DNA of 64,000 nt from Ministeria vibrans ATCC 50519 (taxonomy: Eukaryota > Protista > Filasterea). Numbering within the stretch: position 1 is the stretch's first letter; every line of letters begins with the position of its first letter. The stretch spans positions 23,285 through 87,284 of the forward strand of contig CALSCP010002643.1 in the NCBI GenBank assembly GCA_943704425.1, in the 5' to 3' direction. Below, in pieces: positions 3,935 through 64,000 of this stretch. A program made the position numbers and the translations under genes. The notes below the pieces were generated by a model that made no database searches, was not told the origin of the DNA, and saw nothing but the letters and a program-made list of their open reading frames with translations.

Positions 3935-4814
3935 TCACACTTTCTTCCTCCTCCCCTTCTTCTTCTTCTTCTTCTTCTTCTTCTTCTCGCCCACCTTGTT
4001 AGACGCCTTCTTGGCCACAGTCGATGCAGTCTTCTTTCCCCTCGGTGGCTCCGGCTCCACTGTCAACGGCCCTAACAACTCCCGAATGGCTGCGTGGCCC
4101 CACGACGTCGCAACTTCCAGTGCCGCCTGCCCCCCCTTGGTGCGCTTGTTGGGATCCGCTCCATGCGCCAGCAGGAGTCGCACAAGCTCAATGTTTCCGC
4201 TCTCCGCGCCTCGAATCAATGGTGTCCCTCCGCTCCCAGAGGTCGCGTTCACTTGTGCTCCGGCCTCAATGAGCACTCGTACCACCTCCACCTGTCCCAT
4301 TTTACATCCATGGTGAAGTGCGGTCCATCCGAATGAGTCGGGCGTGTCCACTGCCGCACCGTGTCCAATCAACTCCCGCACATTCGCCACCTGAAACGAC
4401 AAAATACAGACCGATCTCAAAAAATAAACAACATGAAGAGAACCACAATGCTTTCGCACCCCATACCTGCCCCATGAGCGCAGCAAATATCAAAGGCGTG
4501 TGCTTGGCTGCTGCAGCCGACGATGTGCCGGGTTGGACTGCGTTCGCTTCCGTCGCCAGCTTCAGCTTTCGCGCGGTACTCTCGCCTGCCACACAACTCA
4601 ATGTCTCCAATGAGGTCATGAGTGTGTCCAGTCGTCCTTGGCGCGTCGACAGTGGCGCAAGTCGGCTCGGAGGGCCCGGCGACGACTCAAGCAATGAGTG
4701 TGTGACGACAGCGCGCGGACGCGTCCCCCCATCACTAGCGTGAGCTCGAGACACGCTCTTTGGTTGTTCACTCGCCACTATAGGGGGCAAAGTGCAACTT
4801 GTGGCGGTTTTCAT
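3935..4814 (-). CDS. Ankyrin-repeat protein with Lys-rich tail, 2 exons (4814-4467, 4390-3935)
   Basis: Ankyrin motifs TPLIFAALMGQ, GWTALHHGC, GGTPLIRGAESG and GQAALEVA; CAG|GTATGG donor and TTTCAG acceptor join in frame. Confidence 0.85.
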
Positions 4815-34367: not shown

Positions 34368-34717
34368 ACCATATGTAAACGATCTTGTACAAACAATAGA
34401 AAGAACCTTTTGAGAAAAGCCACTCTTATAACTCTGGATCACTTTCGAATCGCAAAGACGGGTTGGGATGATTAAACGCGATAGATTCCACGTCATCTTC
34501 TCGGAGTGACACGACCTATACGAGCAGAGCAAAGTCTCTCACTGACTCTGACACTCCAAACCAGTTGGCATTTATCATTCGCAAGGGTAAAACTGGTTCA
34601 TTCGTAACAAACACTAATGATGGCAGTAAATATATTCGTATTCTGAAAGTTCTTCGTGAAAATATCATTATCAACTATCTTAAAAAACAAAAAACACACA
34701 GAAAAAAAGGAAGAGAA

Positions 34718-58154: not shown

Positions 58155-60131
58155 TTACATGTGAAAAATATATGGACCAGCATACGACTTGGTAGGAGAT
58201 CCTGTAGCATTGAAACTAGAGTTAGCATTGGAACTAGAGTCCGTCTCACTGGAAGCAGAGCAGCTGGACGAGTCATCGTCCGTATCAGCCGACTCAGAGA
58301 CAACCGAGCCCTCTGCGGTCGCGGGGAGAGTTGAAAAGGCAAACGACGGAGCAGTGCTGACCGTGTCAGAGCCCTCCAGACTTGACGTGTCGTCTTCCAG
58401 GTTGTTTTTTCGCACGCCGTTGATGGTCCAGTCGTAGTTTTGAAACTTGATGCGATGTTGGCCGGCAGAAAGAGTTGTCTGAAGCCTATAGCAAACGCAC
58501 CAGGCAGGATCAACGACACGCGAAACAAACATCTCACCATTGTAATCACATAGTCTTACTCAAAGGCGGCTTTCCTCGGCATGTGTTCAATGATCCAGGG
58601 TAGAATACGGTCGCGTCCGCCAAAGTCGGCGACGTACCAGTAGAAGAGCTTTGAGCAGCGAATCTCGGTGTCGGTGATTTCGACGCCTCCGCCCTCGAGA
58701 AAGCCCTCGGTGGCCACTTGAAGTTCGCCGTCGAGGGTGGCGCTGGCGTAAGAGCGGATGGGCGGGCAGCCCTTGGCGCCGCAGACCAGGGCAAAGTGGA
58801 TGCGAGGGTCGAGGCGCTCGAGGATGATGCGACGGCGTGGGTCGTTATGTGCGAAGCGGCGCTTGTGGAGCAGCCCTGCTTTGGGATTGCACCGCAGCAC
58901 GCCGTGCTCCATGTCGTTGAGGGAGTATTCGATGCCGCCAATGACGTATGAGGCGCGGTTGAAGAAACGCGCACGTTGAAGGGCATTTCTAGGAGCGCCA
59001 AGGACTATTTGTGCGTGAATCACAAGCGAATTGTACATGTTGAGAAAAAAGGCACAGCGTTCGTTGTGGCTCAACTGGTCGAGGGAAATGCGCTGAAGGC
59101 GCTGTGTGGCGCACACATAGCGATGGTAGAGTGGCGACTGGCCAATGCCGTCGTAGTCCACACTGCGTCCGTCTGCAGAGAGAAATTCGTCGTACAGATC
59201 GTTGACGAGGGTTCGCAGGTGTTCGGAAAGCACATGGGCGGGGGTAATATCTTCGTTGCAGACCACACTCATGTTGAGACATCCCTACAGTGTGTGCCGA
59301 GAAGAGTGTTTGTCCTCAATGCACTACGTCAAAGACACAACGTCGTACCTTCCCGAACCGCTCATGGGCAATGTAGCGATAGGCGCCGTCGTTGTGAAAC
59401 ATGTGTGGGACGTCGCCATCGAGAGGGCGAAAGAGATGCTTGTCGATGGCGCGCGAGCACAGACTGATCGCTTCAGAGATGCGCATCCGTTTCACTTTCA
59501 AAAGGTAGTTCATTGCCTCAGAGCCAAGAAAGCAGCGGTTTCGCTGCAGGAGAGAGAGGGAGAGAGAGAGACAAGCAAGAACATAAGATAAACAAGAGAG
59601 GGTCACACGGGCGGTGGTGGCGGCGGCGGGAGCGGCCCGCAAGAGGGAGTTGAAGGGAAAGCGAGAGGGGATTCCATTGTGCCGGACACGAAAGAGTACC
59701 TTTCTGAACCGACCGGGCTGCTTGCGGTCGCCGGGCGCAATGGCAGCAACAAGCTCGGCAACAGCAACGGCGTCGTAGTCTTCGCGGATGGAGGGCGTGC
59801 ATTCGACGGTGTTGAGAATGCCTTTCTCGTCGACAGTCAGCGGCAGGGGCGCCCGCTCGTCGTTGTCGCCATAGCTCTCCAAGAACGACATGAACGCGCC
59901 CGCGTCGCCCGCGACACTCTGAAGCTCGGCATTGCCGCCGATGTGGTACGAGCCGACAAAGATCTGGGGCACGGTGCTGCGGTTGGCAAGCTCAATCATT
60001 TCGTAGCGCCGTTCGGGAAGACGCTGCACGTCAATGTACTCCGCACGCACACCCAGCGCACCCAGACGCGCTTCCGTCGCCTTGCAGTACCGGCATCCCT
60101 TTGACGTGTACACCACAACGCGCGGAGGCAT
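58155..60131 (-). CDS. Glutaredoxin-DEP-DUF547 protein, multi-exon
   Basis: CRYC glutaredoxin with TVPQIFVG..IGG; DEP-like CFLGSEAMNYL; DUF547 FFLNMYNSLVIH..LNDMEHGVLR..DPRIHFALVCGAKGCPP..SKLFYWY..DF. Confidence 0.88.
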
Positions 60132-60677
60132 CCTTGTGTAACCGTTTCGTGGGGAATAACTATTACTTAGTTGTGAATTTGCGGTTTGGCAGTGTGGAAA
60201 TTATTCAGAGTGTCTTTTTACCATCTGACTCGACGATAGAGCTGCTCGTCGTCACTTTCGGCCACATATTGGATACTACTGCAGTGGGAGGACGGCCAAG
60301 CGTGTTTCGGGCGCTCTAAACAGTCTCCACGAGAGGTTTATTGTGGTTTGTAAACTCATCCCAAACCAAAAAGGAAATGATAACAAATGCAAATGGAATG
60401 GAGAAAAGCAACAAAATACAGAGGTCATGGTGGCCGAGGGTGGACCAATGGAGGCAATACTAAGCATCCGTGGCTACGGAAAAGTCAGACACTGCGCGTT
60501 TTTCGTTTACCCAATCACAAATAATCCTCTCAAAATTCAAATTTGATTTTGATTACTTTTGAGTTTTGACTTTTCACAATTCACAATTCTTTCTTCCCTC
60601 ATCGGCTTTTGATCGTCTGCATCTCAGTGCTCTGATCAAAACACCGACGAGCCCCAAAGAACCGCTCGCAACCCAAA

Positions 60678-61474
60678 ATCCGTCGCCGGTCAACCACTCC
60701 GCCGCTCGCTCGTGTCCCGTTCCCTAGCGTAAGCCTTGGCCGCCCATTCCTCCCCCATCGCATGCGTCCATGCACCTCCTTTGACTTCTCTGTCGCCGTC
60801 TGCCGCGTGTGTGCGCGTAAGCGCTCAAACTAACGATCATTCGTTTGGAGAAAAAAAATAGGGGGGAAAAAAAAAAGGGAAAACAAACCAGTGCTCGTCT
60901 GTACACGAACGCCCATGGTGCGCATCCCATTTGGTGCGGCGATGCTAATGCGATCCGTCCGGGCGCGTCTCTGAGCGTCGCGCTGGTTTCTCAGAGCGTT
61001 GCAATAAAGCACGCGATAAGACAAACTCGCCCTGTGCGTGCGCATTCCTCCTTCCTCTGGCCCTGCATCCATTGCTGTTGTGTACTCCATCTCTCCGTCG
61101 TCTTGACCAGCGTCAAATCTTCCGTCTTTTGCTCGTTTTCTTTTTTTTTTCTTTTTTTTTTCTCTTCTGCTCATCTCGTCCCATCGATGATTTTCAACCA
61201 ATGGCGGCTGGGACGAGTCCAGCCCCCTCCTACTGGGCTGTCTCATGCCATTGCCGCACTGATTGCGGCCCTGGGGATGGAGATGGTGTTGATTTCTCAC
61301 ACAATGACTTATCATATGAAAACCGCAGTGGCATGTGACTGATGATCATTTCTCTTTCCTCCTTTGCTTCTGCAGCCTCAGCTTCTGCGCAGTCGATTGG
61401 GCCTTACTCTTCAGCTTTCGCACGTCCAAGAGACTCTTGATTTCTTCTCGGAATTCGATTGGGAGCCAAGTTAG
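60678..61474 (+). promoter_or_regulatory. Non-AUG spliced regulatory uORF (uCC-type) of ODC, 49 codons: exons 60678-60728 and 61376-61474
   Basis: aaaATC start; phase-0 intron GTAAGC...TGCAG; peptide IRRRSTTPPLARVPFPS|PQLLRSRLGLTLQLSHVQETLDFFSEFDWEPS*; no AUG in the spliced leader. Confidence 0.8.
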
Positions 61475-61525
61475 CGTGACACGCAGCTCAGCAGTTCAAC
61501 ACCACCTTCAGCACACTTCGTCATC

Positions 61526-62872
61526 ATGTCAGCCCTCTGCGACCCTATTTGCTGCCCAGCTCCGACTGTGCCCTCTCCCACGATGACCCCCATCACCACC
61601 AACTCACCCACCGCCACGACGACTTCCCCTAAGACTACCTCTACCCCTTCTACGTCGGTGCCGGTGCTCTCGCTCAACGGCACCCTCTCGCAGCCGCAAC
61701 TTGCGCGTCTCTTCAACAGCAACCACGCTGACAACAACCTCGCCTACTACGTTGTTGACCTCGCTCGCATCGAGCAGCAACACGCGCGTTTCCTCGAGCT
61801 CCTTCCGCGCGTCGAGCCCTTCTACGCCGTCAAGTGCAACCCGGACATTGAGATCCTGCGTGTTCTTGCGCGTCTGGGCACTGGCTTTGACTGTGCCAGT
61901 CAGGCCGAAATCGAGCTGGTCCAGAGCAACTTTGGCATTGACGGCAGTCGCATCATCTTTGCCAACCCGTGCAAGCCGGCGTCGCACGTGCGCCATGCTC
62001 GCGCCCACGATGTTGCCATGATGACCTTTGACAACGAAGACGAACTTGACAAGATCAAGCAGCTCTACCCGGACGCCCAGCTGGTCCTGCGTGTCCTCAC
62101 CGACGACTCCTCCGCCGTGTGCAAGCTCGCCGCCAAGTTTGGTGCGAGCCCCGAACGCGTGCCGATGCTGCTGGCCCATGCACGTGCCCTGGAGCTCAAC
62201 GTCGTCGGCGTGTCCTTCCACGTCGGCTCTGGCTGTCTCGACGCCAATGCCTTTGCCGATGCTGTGGTGGTTGCTCGCCACGCCATGGACGCCGGCCGCG
62301 CGTATGGCTTTGAGATGAACCTGCTTGATGTCGGCGGTGGCTTTCCCGGCACCGACGACGACGTTCACTCGCCCGTCACCTTCCCCCTCATTGCGTCGGT
62401 GCTCTCTGCTGCCCTTGACGAGCACTTCCCCGAAGACGCTTTCCCTGGTCTCCGCATCATTGCCGAACCCGGCCGCTTCTACGTCTCCTCTTCGCACACC
62501 CTCTCCGTCTGCATCATCTCGCGCCGTCGCAACTGGAGTCCCGACGCGCCGCCACCCGCCGCTCCGTCCTCCATCATGTACTACGTGAACGACGGCGTCT
62601 ACGGCTCCATGAACTGCGTTCTCTACGACCACGCCGTTCTCGAGCCTGCGCCTCTCTTTCCCACCACCTCCGACTCCCGCCTCCCGTCGTCTGTGTGGGG
62701 TCCCACCTGTGACGGTCTCGATTGCATCACCAAGACGGCTGTGCTCCCCGAGCTCACCACCGGCGACTGGATGGTTCTCGAGAACATGGGCGCGTACACC
62801 CGTGCTGCGGGGTGCACTTTCAATGGAATGCCCCTGCCTTCCGTCTACTATGTGCGTACCGAGCTGGAGTGA
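61526..62872 (+). CDS. ODC1: Ornithine decarboxylase
   Basis: PFYAVKCN (PLP lysine), GFDCAS, IIFANPCK, KFGA, SFHVGSG, LDVGGGF, EPGR, NDGVYGS, WGPTCDGLD and MGAYT. Confidence 0.97.
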   Translation: MSALCDPICCPAPTVPSPTMTPITTNSPTATTTSPKTTSTPSTSVPVLSLNGTLSQPQLARLFNSNHADNNLAYYVVDLARIEQQHARFLELLPRVEPFYAVKCNPDIEILRVLARLGTGFDCASQAEIELVQSNFGIDGSRIIFANPCKPASHVRHARAHDVAMMTFDNEDELDKIKQLYPDAQLVLRVLTDDSSAVCKLAAKFGASPERVPMLLAHARALELNVVGVSFHVGSGCLDANAFADAVVVARHAMDAGRAYGFEMNLLDVGGGFPGTDDDVHSPVTFPLIASVLSAALDEHFPEDAFPGLRIIAEPGRFYVSSSHTLSVCIISRRRNWSPDAPPPAAPSSIMYYVNDGVYGSMNCVLYDHAVLEPAPLFPTTSDSRLPSSVWGPTCDGLDCITKTAVLPELTTGDWMVLENMGAYTRAAGCTFNGMPLPSVYYVRTELE

Positions 62873-62930
62873 AATTAAAGTGTGAAAATGAAAAACAACT
62901 TGTGCGTTTGTTTTGAGCAATGTATTTGAG

Positions 62931-63812
62931 TTACAGCGTATTTGATTTTACGGCCCATTCGCCAAATTGAAGAGTATTGGATGACGTAGTGAGGCGTGCG
63001 CAGTGGTCTGTGATGGTGAGGGACAGAAGAGAGTCTTGTGTGCGTGCGAGGGGCGCACTCAGTTCAATGTGCAGCTGCTGATGGGAGGAGGTGCCCGTCG
63101 CTCGCCCATACCACAGCGTGTAGTTGTAGAGGTCATCGCGGGTGCCGGCAAGGGCTGAGAGACTCGCTGCTTGCGCGAGAGGAGGATTGCGTGCGTCAAC
63201 AACAAGTACAAACTTGTCGGCACACACAATGAGCTGACCGCGACAGTCGCTGTCGTCACTGAGCACGAGCGTCAGCCAGCGGCCGTCAGGCGCGTCCCCC
63301 ACGCGCTCCCACACCTCCTTGTAGTCGTCGCCCACGACGCCGTACTCAAGCAGAGTGCGCTTGGCTGTGTCGACGAACGAGACCAATCCAACATCGTCGC
63401 AGCCGGTTGGAGGCTGGCAAGGACCAGAGAGAGAGAGGAAGAGAGAGAGGGGCGGGAGCGAATGAGAAAAGGGATGGGGAGAGCGCGGAGAGCGTACCTG
63501 GACGTCAAGGGACCTTCGCCAGGTCAGCGTGTCGGCGTTGGCTTCGCCGTTGGTCGTGAAAAAACACTCACCCGCAAATCCTTTCACTGTCGCTCGCCAC
63601 TCGTCCAGACGGTCCCCACCGCTTTGCTCGGCCTCCGCCTGTCCGCTGGGTAGTCTCAAGTCACAAAAGGCGCCGTCTGTTTGCAGCCAGAAGACGCGAA
63701 CGGCTGATGGGAGAGGGGTCCCAATCGGTTCTTCGACAGCGGTGCGCTCCCAAAGCCCATGGAAGCAGGCAAGTGACTCGGCGCGGACTGGGCCTGCAGG
63801 TCGACAGTCCAT
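62931..63812 (-). CDS. Hypothetical beta-rich protein (HRI1-like / bacterial-like), one probable intron ~63497-63420
   Basis: GLWER..VFWLQT..FCDLRLP..GFAG..LTWRRSLDVQ..DVG..EYG..YKEVWER. Confidence 0.55.
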   Translation of the reverse strand: MDCRPAGPVRAESLACFHGLWERTAVEEPIGTPLPSAVRVFWLQTDGAFCDLRLPSGQAEAEQSGGDRLDEWRATVKGFAGECFFTTNGEANADTLTWRRSLDVQVRSPRSPHPFSHSLPPLSLFLSLSGPCQPPTGCDDVGLVSFVDTAKRTLLEYGVVGDDYKEVWERVGDAPDGRWLTLVLSDDSDCRGQLIVCADKFVLVVDARNPPLAQAASLSALAGTRDDLYNYTLWYGRATGTSSHQQLHIELSAPLARTQDSLLSLTITDHCARLTTSSNTLQFGEWAVKSNTL

Positions 63813-63872
63813 ATTACAAAAAAAGAATAGAATATATGAATGTGTACTAAAGAAGAGTAAAGTGAAAGAGAC

Positions 63873-64000
63873 TTAAGGTCCGAGGCCTCCTGGAACAACA
63901 GCAGGCACAACACCATTGCCGGTGCGGTAGATCAAAATGTCGCCGTCGTTCGTTGCGCCGTCCCAATCACTCCAAATGCGACACACAGACAACGACTGTG
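63873..64000 (-). CDS. 3' end of an unidentified gene
   Basis: Open frame ..CRIWSDWDGATNDGDILIYRTGNGVVPAVVPGGLGP* running in from the window edge. Confidence 0.4.
   Translation of the reverse strand, partial: QSLSVCRIWSDWDGATNDGDILIYRTGNGVVPAVVPGGLGP

What the first reader, a model, noticed from the sequence alone, without database searches (positions are those of the whole stretch)
60678..61474. Hidden non-AUG, intron-split uORF ending in WEPS* upstream of ODC: polyamine-sensing uCC without the PPW motif
Seen: splicing out 60729-61375 creates a 49-codon ORF starting at ATC in aaaATCc context. It has basic RRR at the N-terminus and ends QETLDFFSEFDWEPS*, 51 nt before the ODC AUG, and the spliced leader has no AUG. 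Known: animal AZIN1 and fungal/invertebrate ODC mRNAs carry a ~50-codon AUU-initiated upstream conserved coding region. I recall it ending ..EQFDFNAEPPWEPS* (from memory; verify). It stalls ribosomes in a polyamine/eIF5A-dependent way. Inference: this is a protist homologue on a catalytically intact ODC in which the PPW elongation-stall motif is replaced by FDW. It may instead rely on the PS-stop termination stall. The ORF track misses it entirely.
Basis: partly seen in the sequence, partly recalled or inferred. Interest (0 to 1): 0.82.

Follow-up and report, generated by a model that had tools for sequence, protein, structure and literature searches.

The report
Polyamine-sensor upstream peptide before ODC gene
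The leader of this protist's ornithine decarboxylase gene encodes a start-codon-less mini-peptide whose tail (…W-E-P-S-stop) matches the polyamine-sensing upstream peptide of animal ODC/antizyme-inhibitor mRNAs but lacks their Pro-Pro stall motif. The same tail precedes the genome's AdoMetDC gene, so this sensor type probably predates animals.

Summary
Removing a GTAAGC…CAG intron (60729-61375) joins ATC 60678 to a 49-codon AUG-less ORF. It ends …LDFFSEFDWEPS-TAG, 51 nt before the AUG of a catalytically intact ODC.

The tail is not chance:
- It is the best of 1,909 stop-anchored tails in the window against four natural animal-type uCC tails (score 36; none of 5,489 own-genome background tails exceeds 25; about 2e-6 per random tail).
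- Only 7 WEPS-stop sites exist in the 29.7-Mb genome. Two lie 51 and 50 nt before the ODC and AdoMetDC start codons.
- The two tails share 11 of 22 residues, with third-codon positions scrambled and both serines in different codon families. That is selection on the peptide.

The scan had already found the AdoMetDC element on other DNA of this genome (s1-765390); I re-derived it independently.

PPW is replaced by FDW here and REW on AdoMetDC. Trichoplax (PEW) and Nematostella also lack PPW.

Not shown: splicing, use of the ATC start, polyamine response. No transcript or close relative was available. An animal-only profile does not find the tails genome-wide.

Verdict: a divergent animal-type uCC in a non-animal opisthokont. 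It probably senses polyamines through an eIF5A-dependent stall at E-P-S-stop.

The parts
60449..60677 (+). Putative 5' leader, exon-1 part upstream of the uCC start. It is ATG-free and lies just downstream of the AT-rich intergenic (promoter-like) dip.
   Evidence: ATG map. GC falls to 0.40 over 60350-60650. The in-frame TGA at 60633-60635 bounds the ORF. The transcription start is not determined.
60678..60680 (+). Proposed near-cognate start codon ATC (AUC), with A at -3.
   Evidence: It is the only plausible in-frame near-cognate codon between the upstream stop and the donor. Natural uCCs start at ATT in similar contexts, for example ggcaaaATTa in L010. Its use is inferred.
60678..60728 (+). 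uCC codons 1-17 (basic and Pro-rich N-terminal part), ending in phase 0.
   Evidence: Translation. No copy elsewhere in the genome.
60729..61375 (+). Proposed 647-nt leader intron (GTAAGC … CTGAT … pyrimidine tract … CAG).
   Evidence: 24 of 27 pyrimidines before the CAG, 14 ATGs inside against none in the flanking leader, and stops in all frames. If the intron is retained, the ATC ORF ends at 60833. Splicing has not been verified by RNA.
61376..61471 (+). uCC codons 18-49, encoded on exon 2.
   Evidence: Translation. It is a single copy in the genome by direct search.
61412..61471 (+). Conserved core of the uCC: QLS-x3-E-x-LD-x3-E-x-D-W-E-P-S.
   Evidence: 11 of 22 residues are identical to the AdoMetDC-leader tail, with synonymous scrambling. 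It is the top-scoring stop-anchored tail in the window against animal uCC tails. See alignment A1.
61472..61474 (+). uCC stop codon TAG, the proposed site of the polyamine-sensitive termination stall (P-S-stop).
   Evidence: The AdoMetDC uCC uses the same stop codon.
61475..61525 (+). 51-nt ATG-free spacer between the uCC stop and the ODC AUG. It is in frame with both and has no stop of its own.
   Evidence: The AdoMetDC spacer is 50 nt.
61526..62873 (+). Ornithine decarboxylase main ORF (448 codons plus stop, single exon).
   Evidence: Translation. Pfam PF02784 and PF00278. All catalytic and PLP-binding residues are kept. It is the only ODC copy in the genome.

Best explanation
[quoted passage not shown] It sits in the spliced, AUG-less leader of the single ODC gene of a non-animal opisthokont protist.

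Proposed working (inferred):
1. Scanning 43S complexes mostly pass the weak AUC start and initiate at the ODC AUG.
2. The few ribosomes that translate the 49-codon uCC must form the E-P and P-S bonds and then terminate at P-S-UAG. These steps depend on eIF5A, and polyamines antagonise eIF5A.
3. [quoted passage not shown]
4. Following scanning complexes queue behind the stall. Over the roughly 147-nt uCC the queue places one of them on the AUC, which raises uCC initiation.
5. This feed-forward loop shuts off ODC synthesis.

The same peptide tail on the AdoMetDC leader would put both rate-limiting polyamine enzymes under one sensor.

Shown: the ORF; its significant similarity to natural uCC tails; its peptide-level conservation with the AdoMetDC leader; the AUG-free exon leader; an intact ODC.

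Inferred: splicing, the AUC start, the stall site, and the polyamine response.
For: 1. Anatomy is exactly as described.

2. Similarity to natural uCC tails taken from ODC loci. The BLOSUM62 stop-anchored score is 36, against a maximum of 21 among the other 1,908 tails of the window and 25 among 5,489 own-genome tails. In 2e7 random tails, 40 reached 36. With about 40 stops in the three + frames of the intergenic region, that gives p of about 8e-5.

3. Only 7 true WEPS-stop sites exist in 29.7 Mb. Two lie 51 and 50 nt upstream of the ODC and AdoMetDC AUGs on the coding strand. The other five show no tail similarity.

4. The ODC and AdoMetDC tails share 11 of 22 residues and the same TAG.
- Only 3 of the 11 shared residues use the same codon.
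- Both Ser residues switch between TCN and AGY.
- Nucleotide identity by codon position is 14/13/7 of 23.
- The other two frames give 2 and 4 matches.
- The flanks are unrelated.
Together this indicates purifying selection on the peptide, not on the RNA, and not a recent duplication.

5. The AdoMetDC tail is even closer to animal tails (score 45, never reached in 2e7 random tails). For example, 10 of 16 residues are identical to L022 and to Trichoplax.

6. There are 0 ATGs in 430 nt of exonic leader (5.0 expected) against 14 in the intron.

7. At 49 codons the length fits natural and published uCCs of 40-52 codons.

8. Literature:
- uCC repression depends on the C-terminal peptide and on non-AUG initiation (PMC2811004).
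- The PS-stop uORF of HOL1 stalls termination when polyamines block eIF5A (PMC11550727).
- eIF5A is needed for termination and for many non-polyproline motifs rich in D/E, P and G (PMC5499558).
Against: - No RNA evidence exists for the intron, the transcription start or translation. The exact ODC product is not on record in the assembly collection.
- No close relative exists in the databases. ODC hits reach at most 55% identity, so orthologous-leader conservation could not be tested.
- A profile built from the four animal-type tails alone finds nothing in the genome at E<=10. The similarity is therefore significant only with stop-anchoring and the positional prior.
- The PPW motif, the mapped stall site of AZIN1, is absent.
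- Capsaspora genomic DNA (1.15 kb upstream) and cDNA-like contigs of a Capsaspora-like ODC lack any uCC. Descent from a common ancestor therefore requires losses.
- No antizyme domain was detected in the genome (inconclusive).
Confidence: 0.72

Rival explanations
1. The conserved tail is a real translated uORF, but the reader's gene model is wrong. Either transcription starts inside the proposed intron or the intron is not removed. The uORF would then begin at a near-cognate codon near or inside exon 2: TTG 61364, CTG 61370, CTG 61385 or TTG 61397. That gives a uORF of roughly 25-36 codons with no exon-1 part.
For: - The whole conserved core lies in exon 2.
- The unspliced frame is open from 61346, for 42 codons.
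- The exon-1 peptide has no detectable relative.
- The AdoMetDC uCC needs no intron.
Against: - A very strong acceptor sits exactly at the ORF junction: 24 of 27 pyrimidines plus CAG, with CTGAT 33 nt upstream.
- The only consensus-like donor in exon 1 (GTAAGC) joins in phase 0.
- The AT-rich promoter-like dip lies upstream of exon 1, not in the intron.
- 14 ATGs reach up to 61342, so a start site would have to fall within about 30 nt.
- The spliced length of 49 codons matches known uCCs.
- Putative phase-0 acceptors lie 29-33 codons before the stop in L022, Nematostella and Trichoplax as well.
Confidence: 0.2
2. The element is functional but convergent. The ribosome exit tunnel and eIF5A chemistry would select the same W-x-P-S-stop tail repeatedly. 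It would then be an analogue, not a homologue, of the animal uCC.
For: - The 2010 review argues that uCCs arose independently in four groups, and that plant AdoMetDC uORFs also end in PS-stop (PMC2811004).
- Yeast HOL1 uses PS-stop.
- Capsaspora-lineage ODC leaders lack a uCC.
- The animal-only profile fails genome-wide.
- The post-stop nucleotide block conserved among animal loci is not shared.
Against: The similarity extends well beyond PS-stop. For the AdoMetDC copy it reads Y-R-E-x-L-[DN]-x-N-x-E-x-x-W-x-P-S, with 10 of 16 residues identical to animal tails. Length is similar, and a phase-0 acceptor may lie at a similar distance from the stop.
Confidence: 0.2
3. It is a chance ORF in a 5' leader with no function.
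For: The genome is GC-rich and has long random open frames. No expression data are available.
Against: - Top-ranked tail of the window, at about 2e-6 per random tail.
- Two of the seven WEPS-stop sites in the genome lie about 50 nt before the two polyamine decarboxylase AUGs.
- The codon-position pattern shows peptide selection.
Confidence: 0.02
4. The ORF is the front of an N-terminally extended ODC isoform made by non-AUG initiation plus TAG readthrough, because the uCC is in frame with the ODC ORF.
For: The uCC, the 17 stop-free spacer codons and the ODC ATG are in one frame, interrupted only by the TAG.
Against: - The AdoMetDC copy has a 50-nt spacer and is out of frame.
- Conservation peaks at the residues immediately before the stop and includes the stop itself.
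- There is no known readthrough context.
- The spacer is not conserved.
Confidence: 0.03
5. The conservation reflects an RNA element (a structure or a protein-binding site) and not a peptide.
For: Leaders often hold structured elements. Another first-stage note proposes RNA structures in the intron.
Against: Third codon positions are essentially random between the two copies (7 of 23), and both serines use different codon families. Rfam finds nothing in the exon.
Confidence: 0.02

Closest known systems
Animal-type uCC of AZIN1 and invertebrate ODC mRNAs (Ivanov, Loughran and Atkins 2008; Ivanov et al. 2018; reviewed in PMC2811004)
   Same: - It lies in the leader of an ODC homologue.
- It has no AUG, and a near-cognate Ile-codon start with A at -3.
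- It is about 50 codons long.
- It has the C-terminal pattern L-[DN]-x-x-x-E-x-x-W-[DEN]-P-S-stop.
- It ends a short distance before the main AUG.
   Different: - The two adjacent prolines of PPW, the mapped eIF5A-dependent stall site, are replaced by F-D.
- The start is AUC, not AUU.
- The host is not an animal (ODC tree).
- The spacer is 51 nt, against 86-118 nt in the cDNA-like animal loci (L010, L006, L050).
- It lacks the post-stop nucleotide block shared by animal loci.
- The same genome also places the tail on AdoMetDC.
Trichoplax and Nematostella ODC-leader tails (recovered here: L082 stop at 4596, L001 stop at 4250)
   Same: They are natural tails lacking PPW. Trichoplax ends …E-P-E-W-D-P-S-stop and Nematostella ends …D-S-E-P-S-stop. 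Each has a putative phase-0 acceptor about 29-33 codons before the stop.
   Different: They are animal loci that carry the conserved post-stop block and a donor about 36-39 nt after the stop. Whether they have been described in print could not be checked, because the primary papers are not held.
uCC on the AdoMetDC leader of the same genome (G000:C1740, stop at 34705-34707 on the minus strand; earlier scan note s1-765390)
   Same: It has the same tail core (QLS…E-x-LD…E-x-[DE]-W-E-P-S-TAG), no AUG in the leader, a 50-nt spacer and no PPW (REW instead).
   Different: It sits on a different gene. It needs no intron. Its start codon is ambiguous: GTG gives 52 codons, ACG 46 and ATC 39. It is out of frame with the main ORF.
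PS-stop uORFs of yeast HOL1 and of plant AdoMetDC (small uORF)
   Same: They are polyamine-pathway mRNAs whose uORF ends in Pro-Ser-stop. For HOL1, polyamines impair eIF5A-dependent peptide release and cause queuing (PMC11550727).
   Different: Apart from PS-stop, no resemblance of these uORFs to the window tail is known to me, and I did not compare them here. As I recall, the plant small uORF is AUG-initiated. These are analogues in mechanism, not family members.

Membership tests
ODC/AZIN1 uCC, animal type | Located in the 5' leader of an ODC homologue and ending shortly before the main AUG | tested here: met
   The stop at 61472-61474 is 51 nt before the ODC ATG at 61526. The ODC is confirmed by Pfam and by its catalytic residues.
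ODC/AZIN1 uCC, animal type | No AUG in the uCC or leader; initiation at a conserved near-cognate codon (mostly AUU) in good context | tested here: inconclusive
   The spliced leader has no ATG. AUC with A at -3 is the only candidate in exon 1. Its use, the intron and its conservation could not be tested.
ODC/AZIN1 uCC, animal type | Conserved C-terminal peptide matching the family consensus | tested here: met
   In alignment A1, E16, W19, P21 and S22 are invariant, and L and [DN] are shared. The stop-anchored score is 36 against a background maximum of 25, about 2e-6 per tail. Caveat: the animal-only HMM is not significant genome-wide.
ODC/AZIN1 uCC, animal type | Two adjacent prolines followed by Trp (PPW) near the C-terminus (present in 'almost all' examples per PMC2811004) | tested here: not met
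   The tail has F-D-W. Trp is kept. Trichoplax (PEW) and Nematostella also lack PP, so the feature is not universal.
ODC/AZIN1 uCC, animal type | Ends in Pro-Ser-stop | tested here: met
   CCA AGT TAG at 61466-61474.
ODC/AZIN1 uCC, animal type | Length of about 40-52 codons | tested here: met
   49 codons under the spliced model. Natural examples have 40 and 50 codons, and the published one has 52. This depends on the unverified intron.
ODC/AZIN1 uCC, animal type | Polyamine- and eIF5A-dependent repression of the main ORF through ribosome stalling and queuing | not testable with these tools
   This needs reporters or ribosome profiling with and without spermidine.
PS-stop polyamine uORFs (HOL1 type) | A uORF on a polyamine-pathway mRNA with a conserved Pro-Ser-stop that impairs termination at high polyamine | tested here: inconclusive
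   PS-stop is present and is conserved between the ODC and AdoMetDC leaders. The termination stall itself is untested.

The most novel reading that the evidence does not exclude
The W-x-P-S-stop nascent peptide is an ancestral, pre-metazoan polyamine sensor. It works without polyproline, through an eIF5A-dependent stall at E-P-S-stop. In this lineage it controls both rate-limiting decarboxylases, ODC and AdoMetDC. The PPW elongation stall of animal AZIN1/ODC would then be a later reinforcement, and the leader intron about 30 codons before the stop may be a shared ancestral intron.
Probability: 0.4. Interest if true: 0.75.

Novelty: new variant of a known kind. Interest (0 to 1): 0.62.

Why it matters
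The uCC is a textbook case of a nascent peptide that lets a ribosome sense a metabolite. According to the 2010 review that I could read, it is documented for animals and three fungal groups, and its mechanism has been tied to the PPW motif.

A copy with clear peptide-level selection in a unicellular, non-animal opisthokont has three implications:
1. It moves the likely origin of the animal-type sensor before animals.
2. It offers natural PPW-less variants (FDW, REW, and PEW in Trichoplax). These separate the contribution of the polyproline elongation stall from that of the W-x-P-S-stop termination stall.
3. Together with the AdoMetDC copy, it shows one sensor peptide wired to both committed steps of polyamine synthesis.

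Each point can be tested directly with standard reporter assays. For annotation, it shows that intron-split non-AUG uORFs are missed by ORF tracks.

Tried and rejected
- **Primary papers.** PMC2481320, PMC5916843 and PMC8500938 are not held. I relied on reviews and on a figure legend.
- **Close relatives.** The ODC word search gave no hit above 55% identity. The exact ODC product is not on record, so there is no cDNA of this organism.
- **Profile search of 5.8e9 proteins** with uCC alignment A5: one candidate and no hit, because such short peptides are hardly present in that collection.
- **Animal-only tail profile (A2) against the own genome:** nothing at E<=10. The profile that includes the two protist tails (A1) finds exactly the two leaders, but that test is circular.
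- **De novo splice-site consensus.** Hexamer enrichment and an ORF-joining screen were both swamped by noise in this GC-rich genome. Only anecdotal donors (GTACGC, GTAAGA, GTGCGT) are available for comparison.
- **Other W[DEN]PS-stop sites in the genome** (five WEPS plus three WNPS/WDPS): no tail similarity and no polyamine gene downstream.
- **Antizyme Pfam domain:** no match, and the search is uninformative.
- **Capsaspora genomic DNA, Capsaspora-like cDNAs and loci L079/L080:** no uCC. The chytrid L081 gave only a weak look-alike.
- **Gumbel fit of the background scores:** a poor fit, so I ignored it in favour of simulation.
- **Joined peptide.** The joined 49-residue spliced peptide was never sent to a search tool. 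The exons were searched apart by reference, and alignments used exon 2 only.
- **Human sequence.** No human contig was fetched. The human AZIN1 peptide was only read in a paper.

Full report
**1. Observation**

Reading 60000-64000 and translating by reference confirms every coordinate in the finding.
- ATC at 60678 opens 17 codons that end in phase 0 at 60728.
- A 647-nt interval, 60729-61375, begins GTAAGC. It ends with 24 of 27 pyrimidines followed by CAG, with a CTGAT 33 nt upstream.
- Exon 2 (61376-61471) adds 32 codons ending …LDFFSEFDWEPS. TAG is at 61472-61474.
- The ODC ATG follows at 61526, so the spacer is 51 nt.
- An in-frame TGA at 60633-60635 bounds the ORF upstream. ATC is the only plausible in-frame near-cognate codon in exon 1.
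- There is no ATG from 60449 to 60761 or from 61343 to 61525. That is 0 in 430 nt against 5.0 expected from composition. The proposed intron holds 14 ATGs against 8.1 expected.

**2. The main gene**

The downstream ORF is a genuine ODC.
- It hits Pfam PF02784 and PF00278.
- It keeps K69, D88, R154, H197, S200, G235-237, E274, R277, D332, C360, D361 and Y389, in mammalian numbering. The roles of these residues come from my own knowledge of ODC structures.
- It is the only ODC in the 29.7-Mb assembly.

**3. What is known**

- uCCs occur in ODC homologues of animals and three fungal groups.
- They mostly start at AUU or other non-AUG codons.
- Almost all carry two adjacent prolines near the C-terminus.
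- In six animal phyla they end in Pro-Ser. Repression needs the C-terminal peptide (PMC2811004).
- PPW occupies residues 47-49 of the mouse Azin1 uCC (bioRxiv 10.1101/710061).
- A figure legend in PMC9648851 prints the 52-residue AZIN1 uCC ending …NAEPPWEPS.
- The HOL1 uORF uses a conserved PS-stop at which polyamines impair eIF5A-dependent release (PMC11550727).
- eIF5A is needed for termination and for many non-polyproline motifs (PMC5499558).
- The primary uCC papers are not held.

**4. Natural comparators**

A metagenome scan with the ODC protein returned 28 loci. Scanning their leaders found canonical uCC tails in three of them:
- L006: …QLDYNTEPPWDPS-stop
- L010: …KLNFNTEPPWDPS-stop
- L022: …KLNFNAEPPWNPS-stop

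L006 and L010 have ATT starts giving 40 and 50 codons.

Further comparators:
- A Logan cDNA-like contig (L050) ends …DPNAEPPWEPS-stop.
- Trichoplax (L082) has …FRDQLDINFEPEWDPS-stop, so PEW instead of PPW.
- Nematostella (L001) has …FIIDSEPS-stop, followed by the post-stop block typical of animal loci.
- Capsaspora genomic DNA (1.15 kb upstream) and four cDNA-like contigs of a Capsaspora-like ODC show no uCC.

**5. Significance**

I scored tails against the four PPW-type tails (stop-anchored, ungapped BLOSUM62, last 15 residues).
- The window tail scores 36. It is the best of 1,909 tails in all six frames of the window; the next best scores 21.
- None of 5,489 own-genome background tails exceeds 25.
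- In 2e7 random tails, 40 reach 36 and none reaches 45.
- With about 40 stops in the three forward frames of the 1.4-kb intergenic region, p is about 8e-5.
- Honest caveat: an HMM built from the four animal tails alone finds nothing in the genome at E<=10.

**6. The second copy**

I tested this independently.
- The degenerate pattern for W-E-P-S-stop has 16 matches genome-wide against 19 for the control. Only 7 are true WEPS-stop sites.
- One is ours. Another lies on the coding strand 50 nt upstream of the AdoMetDC ATG.
- The other five, and three WNPS/WDPS-stop sites, have unrelated tails.

Comparison of the two tails:
- They share 11 of 22 residues plus the TAG.
- Only 3 of the 11 shared residues use the same codon.
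- Both serines switch between TCN and AGY.
- Nucleotide identity by codon position is 14/13/7 of 23.
- The other two frames give 2 and 4 matches, and the flanks are unrelated.

This is the signature of purifying selection on a translated peptide. It is not the signature of an RNA element or of a recent duplication. The AdoMetDC tail (…YREQLDVNCEREWEPS) scores 45 against the animal tails, and 10 of its 16 residues are identical to L022 and to Trichoplax. Neither protist tail has PPW.

**7. Gene model**

Splicing is inferred from five observations:
- the strong acceptor;
- the only consensus-like donor, which joins in phase 0;
- the ATG distribution;
- the AT-rich, promoter-like dip upstream of exon 1;
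- the resulting length of 49 codons.

Putative phase-0 acceptors also lie 33, 33 and 29 codons before the stop in L022, Nematostella and Trichoplax. In Trichoplax the in-frame TAG coincides with the acceptor AG. This is suggestive of a shared intron, not proof.

The conserved core lies wholly in exon 2. The unspliced frame is open for 42 codons and contains TTG and CTG codons. A shorter uORF without exon 1 therefore remains possible.

I could not derive a genome-specific splice consensus. No transcript was retrievable.

The exons were searched apart.

**8. Who is the host?**

ODC hits reach at most 55% identity and are opisthokont-like. In a maximum-likelihood tree the window ODC falls outside a well-supported animal clade (98/95). 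It sits in an unresolved group with Capsaspora, Corallochytrium and fungi. Another note names the genome Ministeria vibrans (s1-781005). I could not verify the name.

**9. Mechanism (inferred)**

- Leaky scanning past AUC gives ODC synthesis at low polyamine.
- At high polyamine, eIF5A is inhibited. Ribosomes translating the uCC stall at E-P-S-UAG, and scanning complexes queue behind them.
- Over roughly 147 nt the queue reaches the AUC and raises uCC initiation. ODC translation falls.
- Loss of PP suggests that the stall depends more on termination, as in HOL1, than on the PPW elongation step.

**10. Verdict**

This is a divergent member of the animal-type uCC family in a non-animal opisthokont, paired with a sister copy on AdoMetDC. 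Function, start codon and splicing remain to be shown.

Noticed in passing
L006:247-285, L010:475-510, L022:2653-2690, L050:129-165, L082:4594-4630, L001:4248-4285: Animal-type ODC loci share a nucleotide block right after the uCC stop, roughly TGATATTTGCTMAAGG-GCAGGTGTTCT. The protist ODC and AdoMetDC leaders do not clearly share it. The block may be a termination or reinitiation context element.
   Followed up: partly
L022:2554-2695; L001:4149-4292; L082:4507-4635: In three animal genomic loci the uCC tail sits on a mini-exon. A putative phase-0 acceptor lies 29-33 codons before the stop, and a GT donor lies about 36-39 nt after it. The protist has the upstream acceptor at 32 codons but no downstream intron.
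   Followed up: partly
window 61283-61343 (+): A weak C/D-box snoRNA-like match (Rfam sR5, 19.8 bits, E=0.065, below gathering) lies inside the proposed leader intron, ending about 32 nt before the acceptor. If real, an intronic snoRNA would support the intron.
   Followed up: no
window 61376-61528: The uCC, the 17 stop-free spacer codons and the ODC ATG are all in one frame, separated only by the TAG. TAG readthrough would therefore give an N-terminally extended ODC. The AdoMetDC copy is out of frame, so this is probably coincidence.
   Followed up: partly
G000 whole genome: No match to the antizyme domain (PF02100) at E<=1 in a six-frame search. The control genomes were also silent, so absence is not shown. 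Whether this organism has antizyme at all is open.
   Followed up: no
L049:1-1153; L083-L086:1-200: Capsaspora ODC (genomic, 1.15 kb upstream) and cDNA-like contigs of a Capsaspora-like ODC (AT-rich leader of about 200 nt) have no uCC-like tail. The element is therefore patchy among unicellular relatives of animals.
   Followed up: yes
L081:1335-1412: The chytrid Borealophlyctis has an ORF about 1 kb upstream of ODC that ends …LNVGLTQEWSNA-stop (score 20). It is a weak look-alike of the L-[DN]-x…E-W tail without PS. It could be chance.
   Followed up: no
L043 (minus strand; reverse-complement coordinates about 1660-1700): The first coding exon of AdoMetDC ends about 32 codons after the ATG, at a GTGCGT donor. 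A T-rich stretch and a run of N (an assembly gap or withheld sequence) follow.
   Followed up: no
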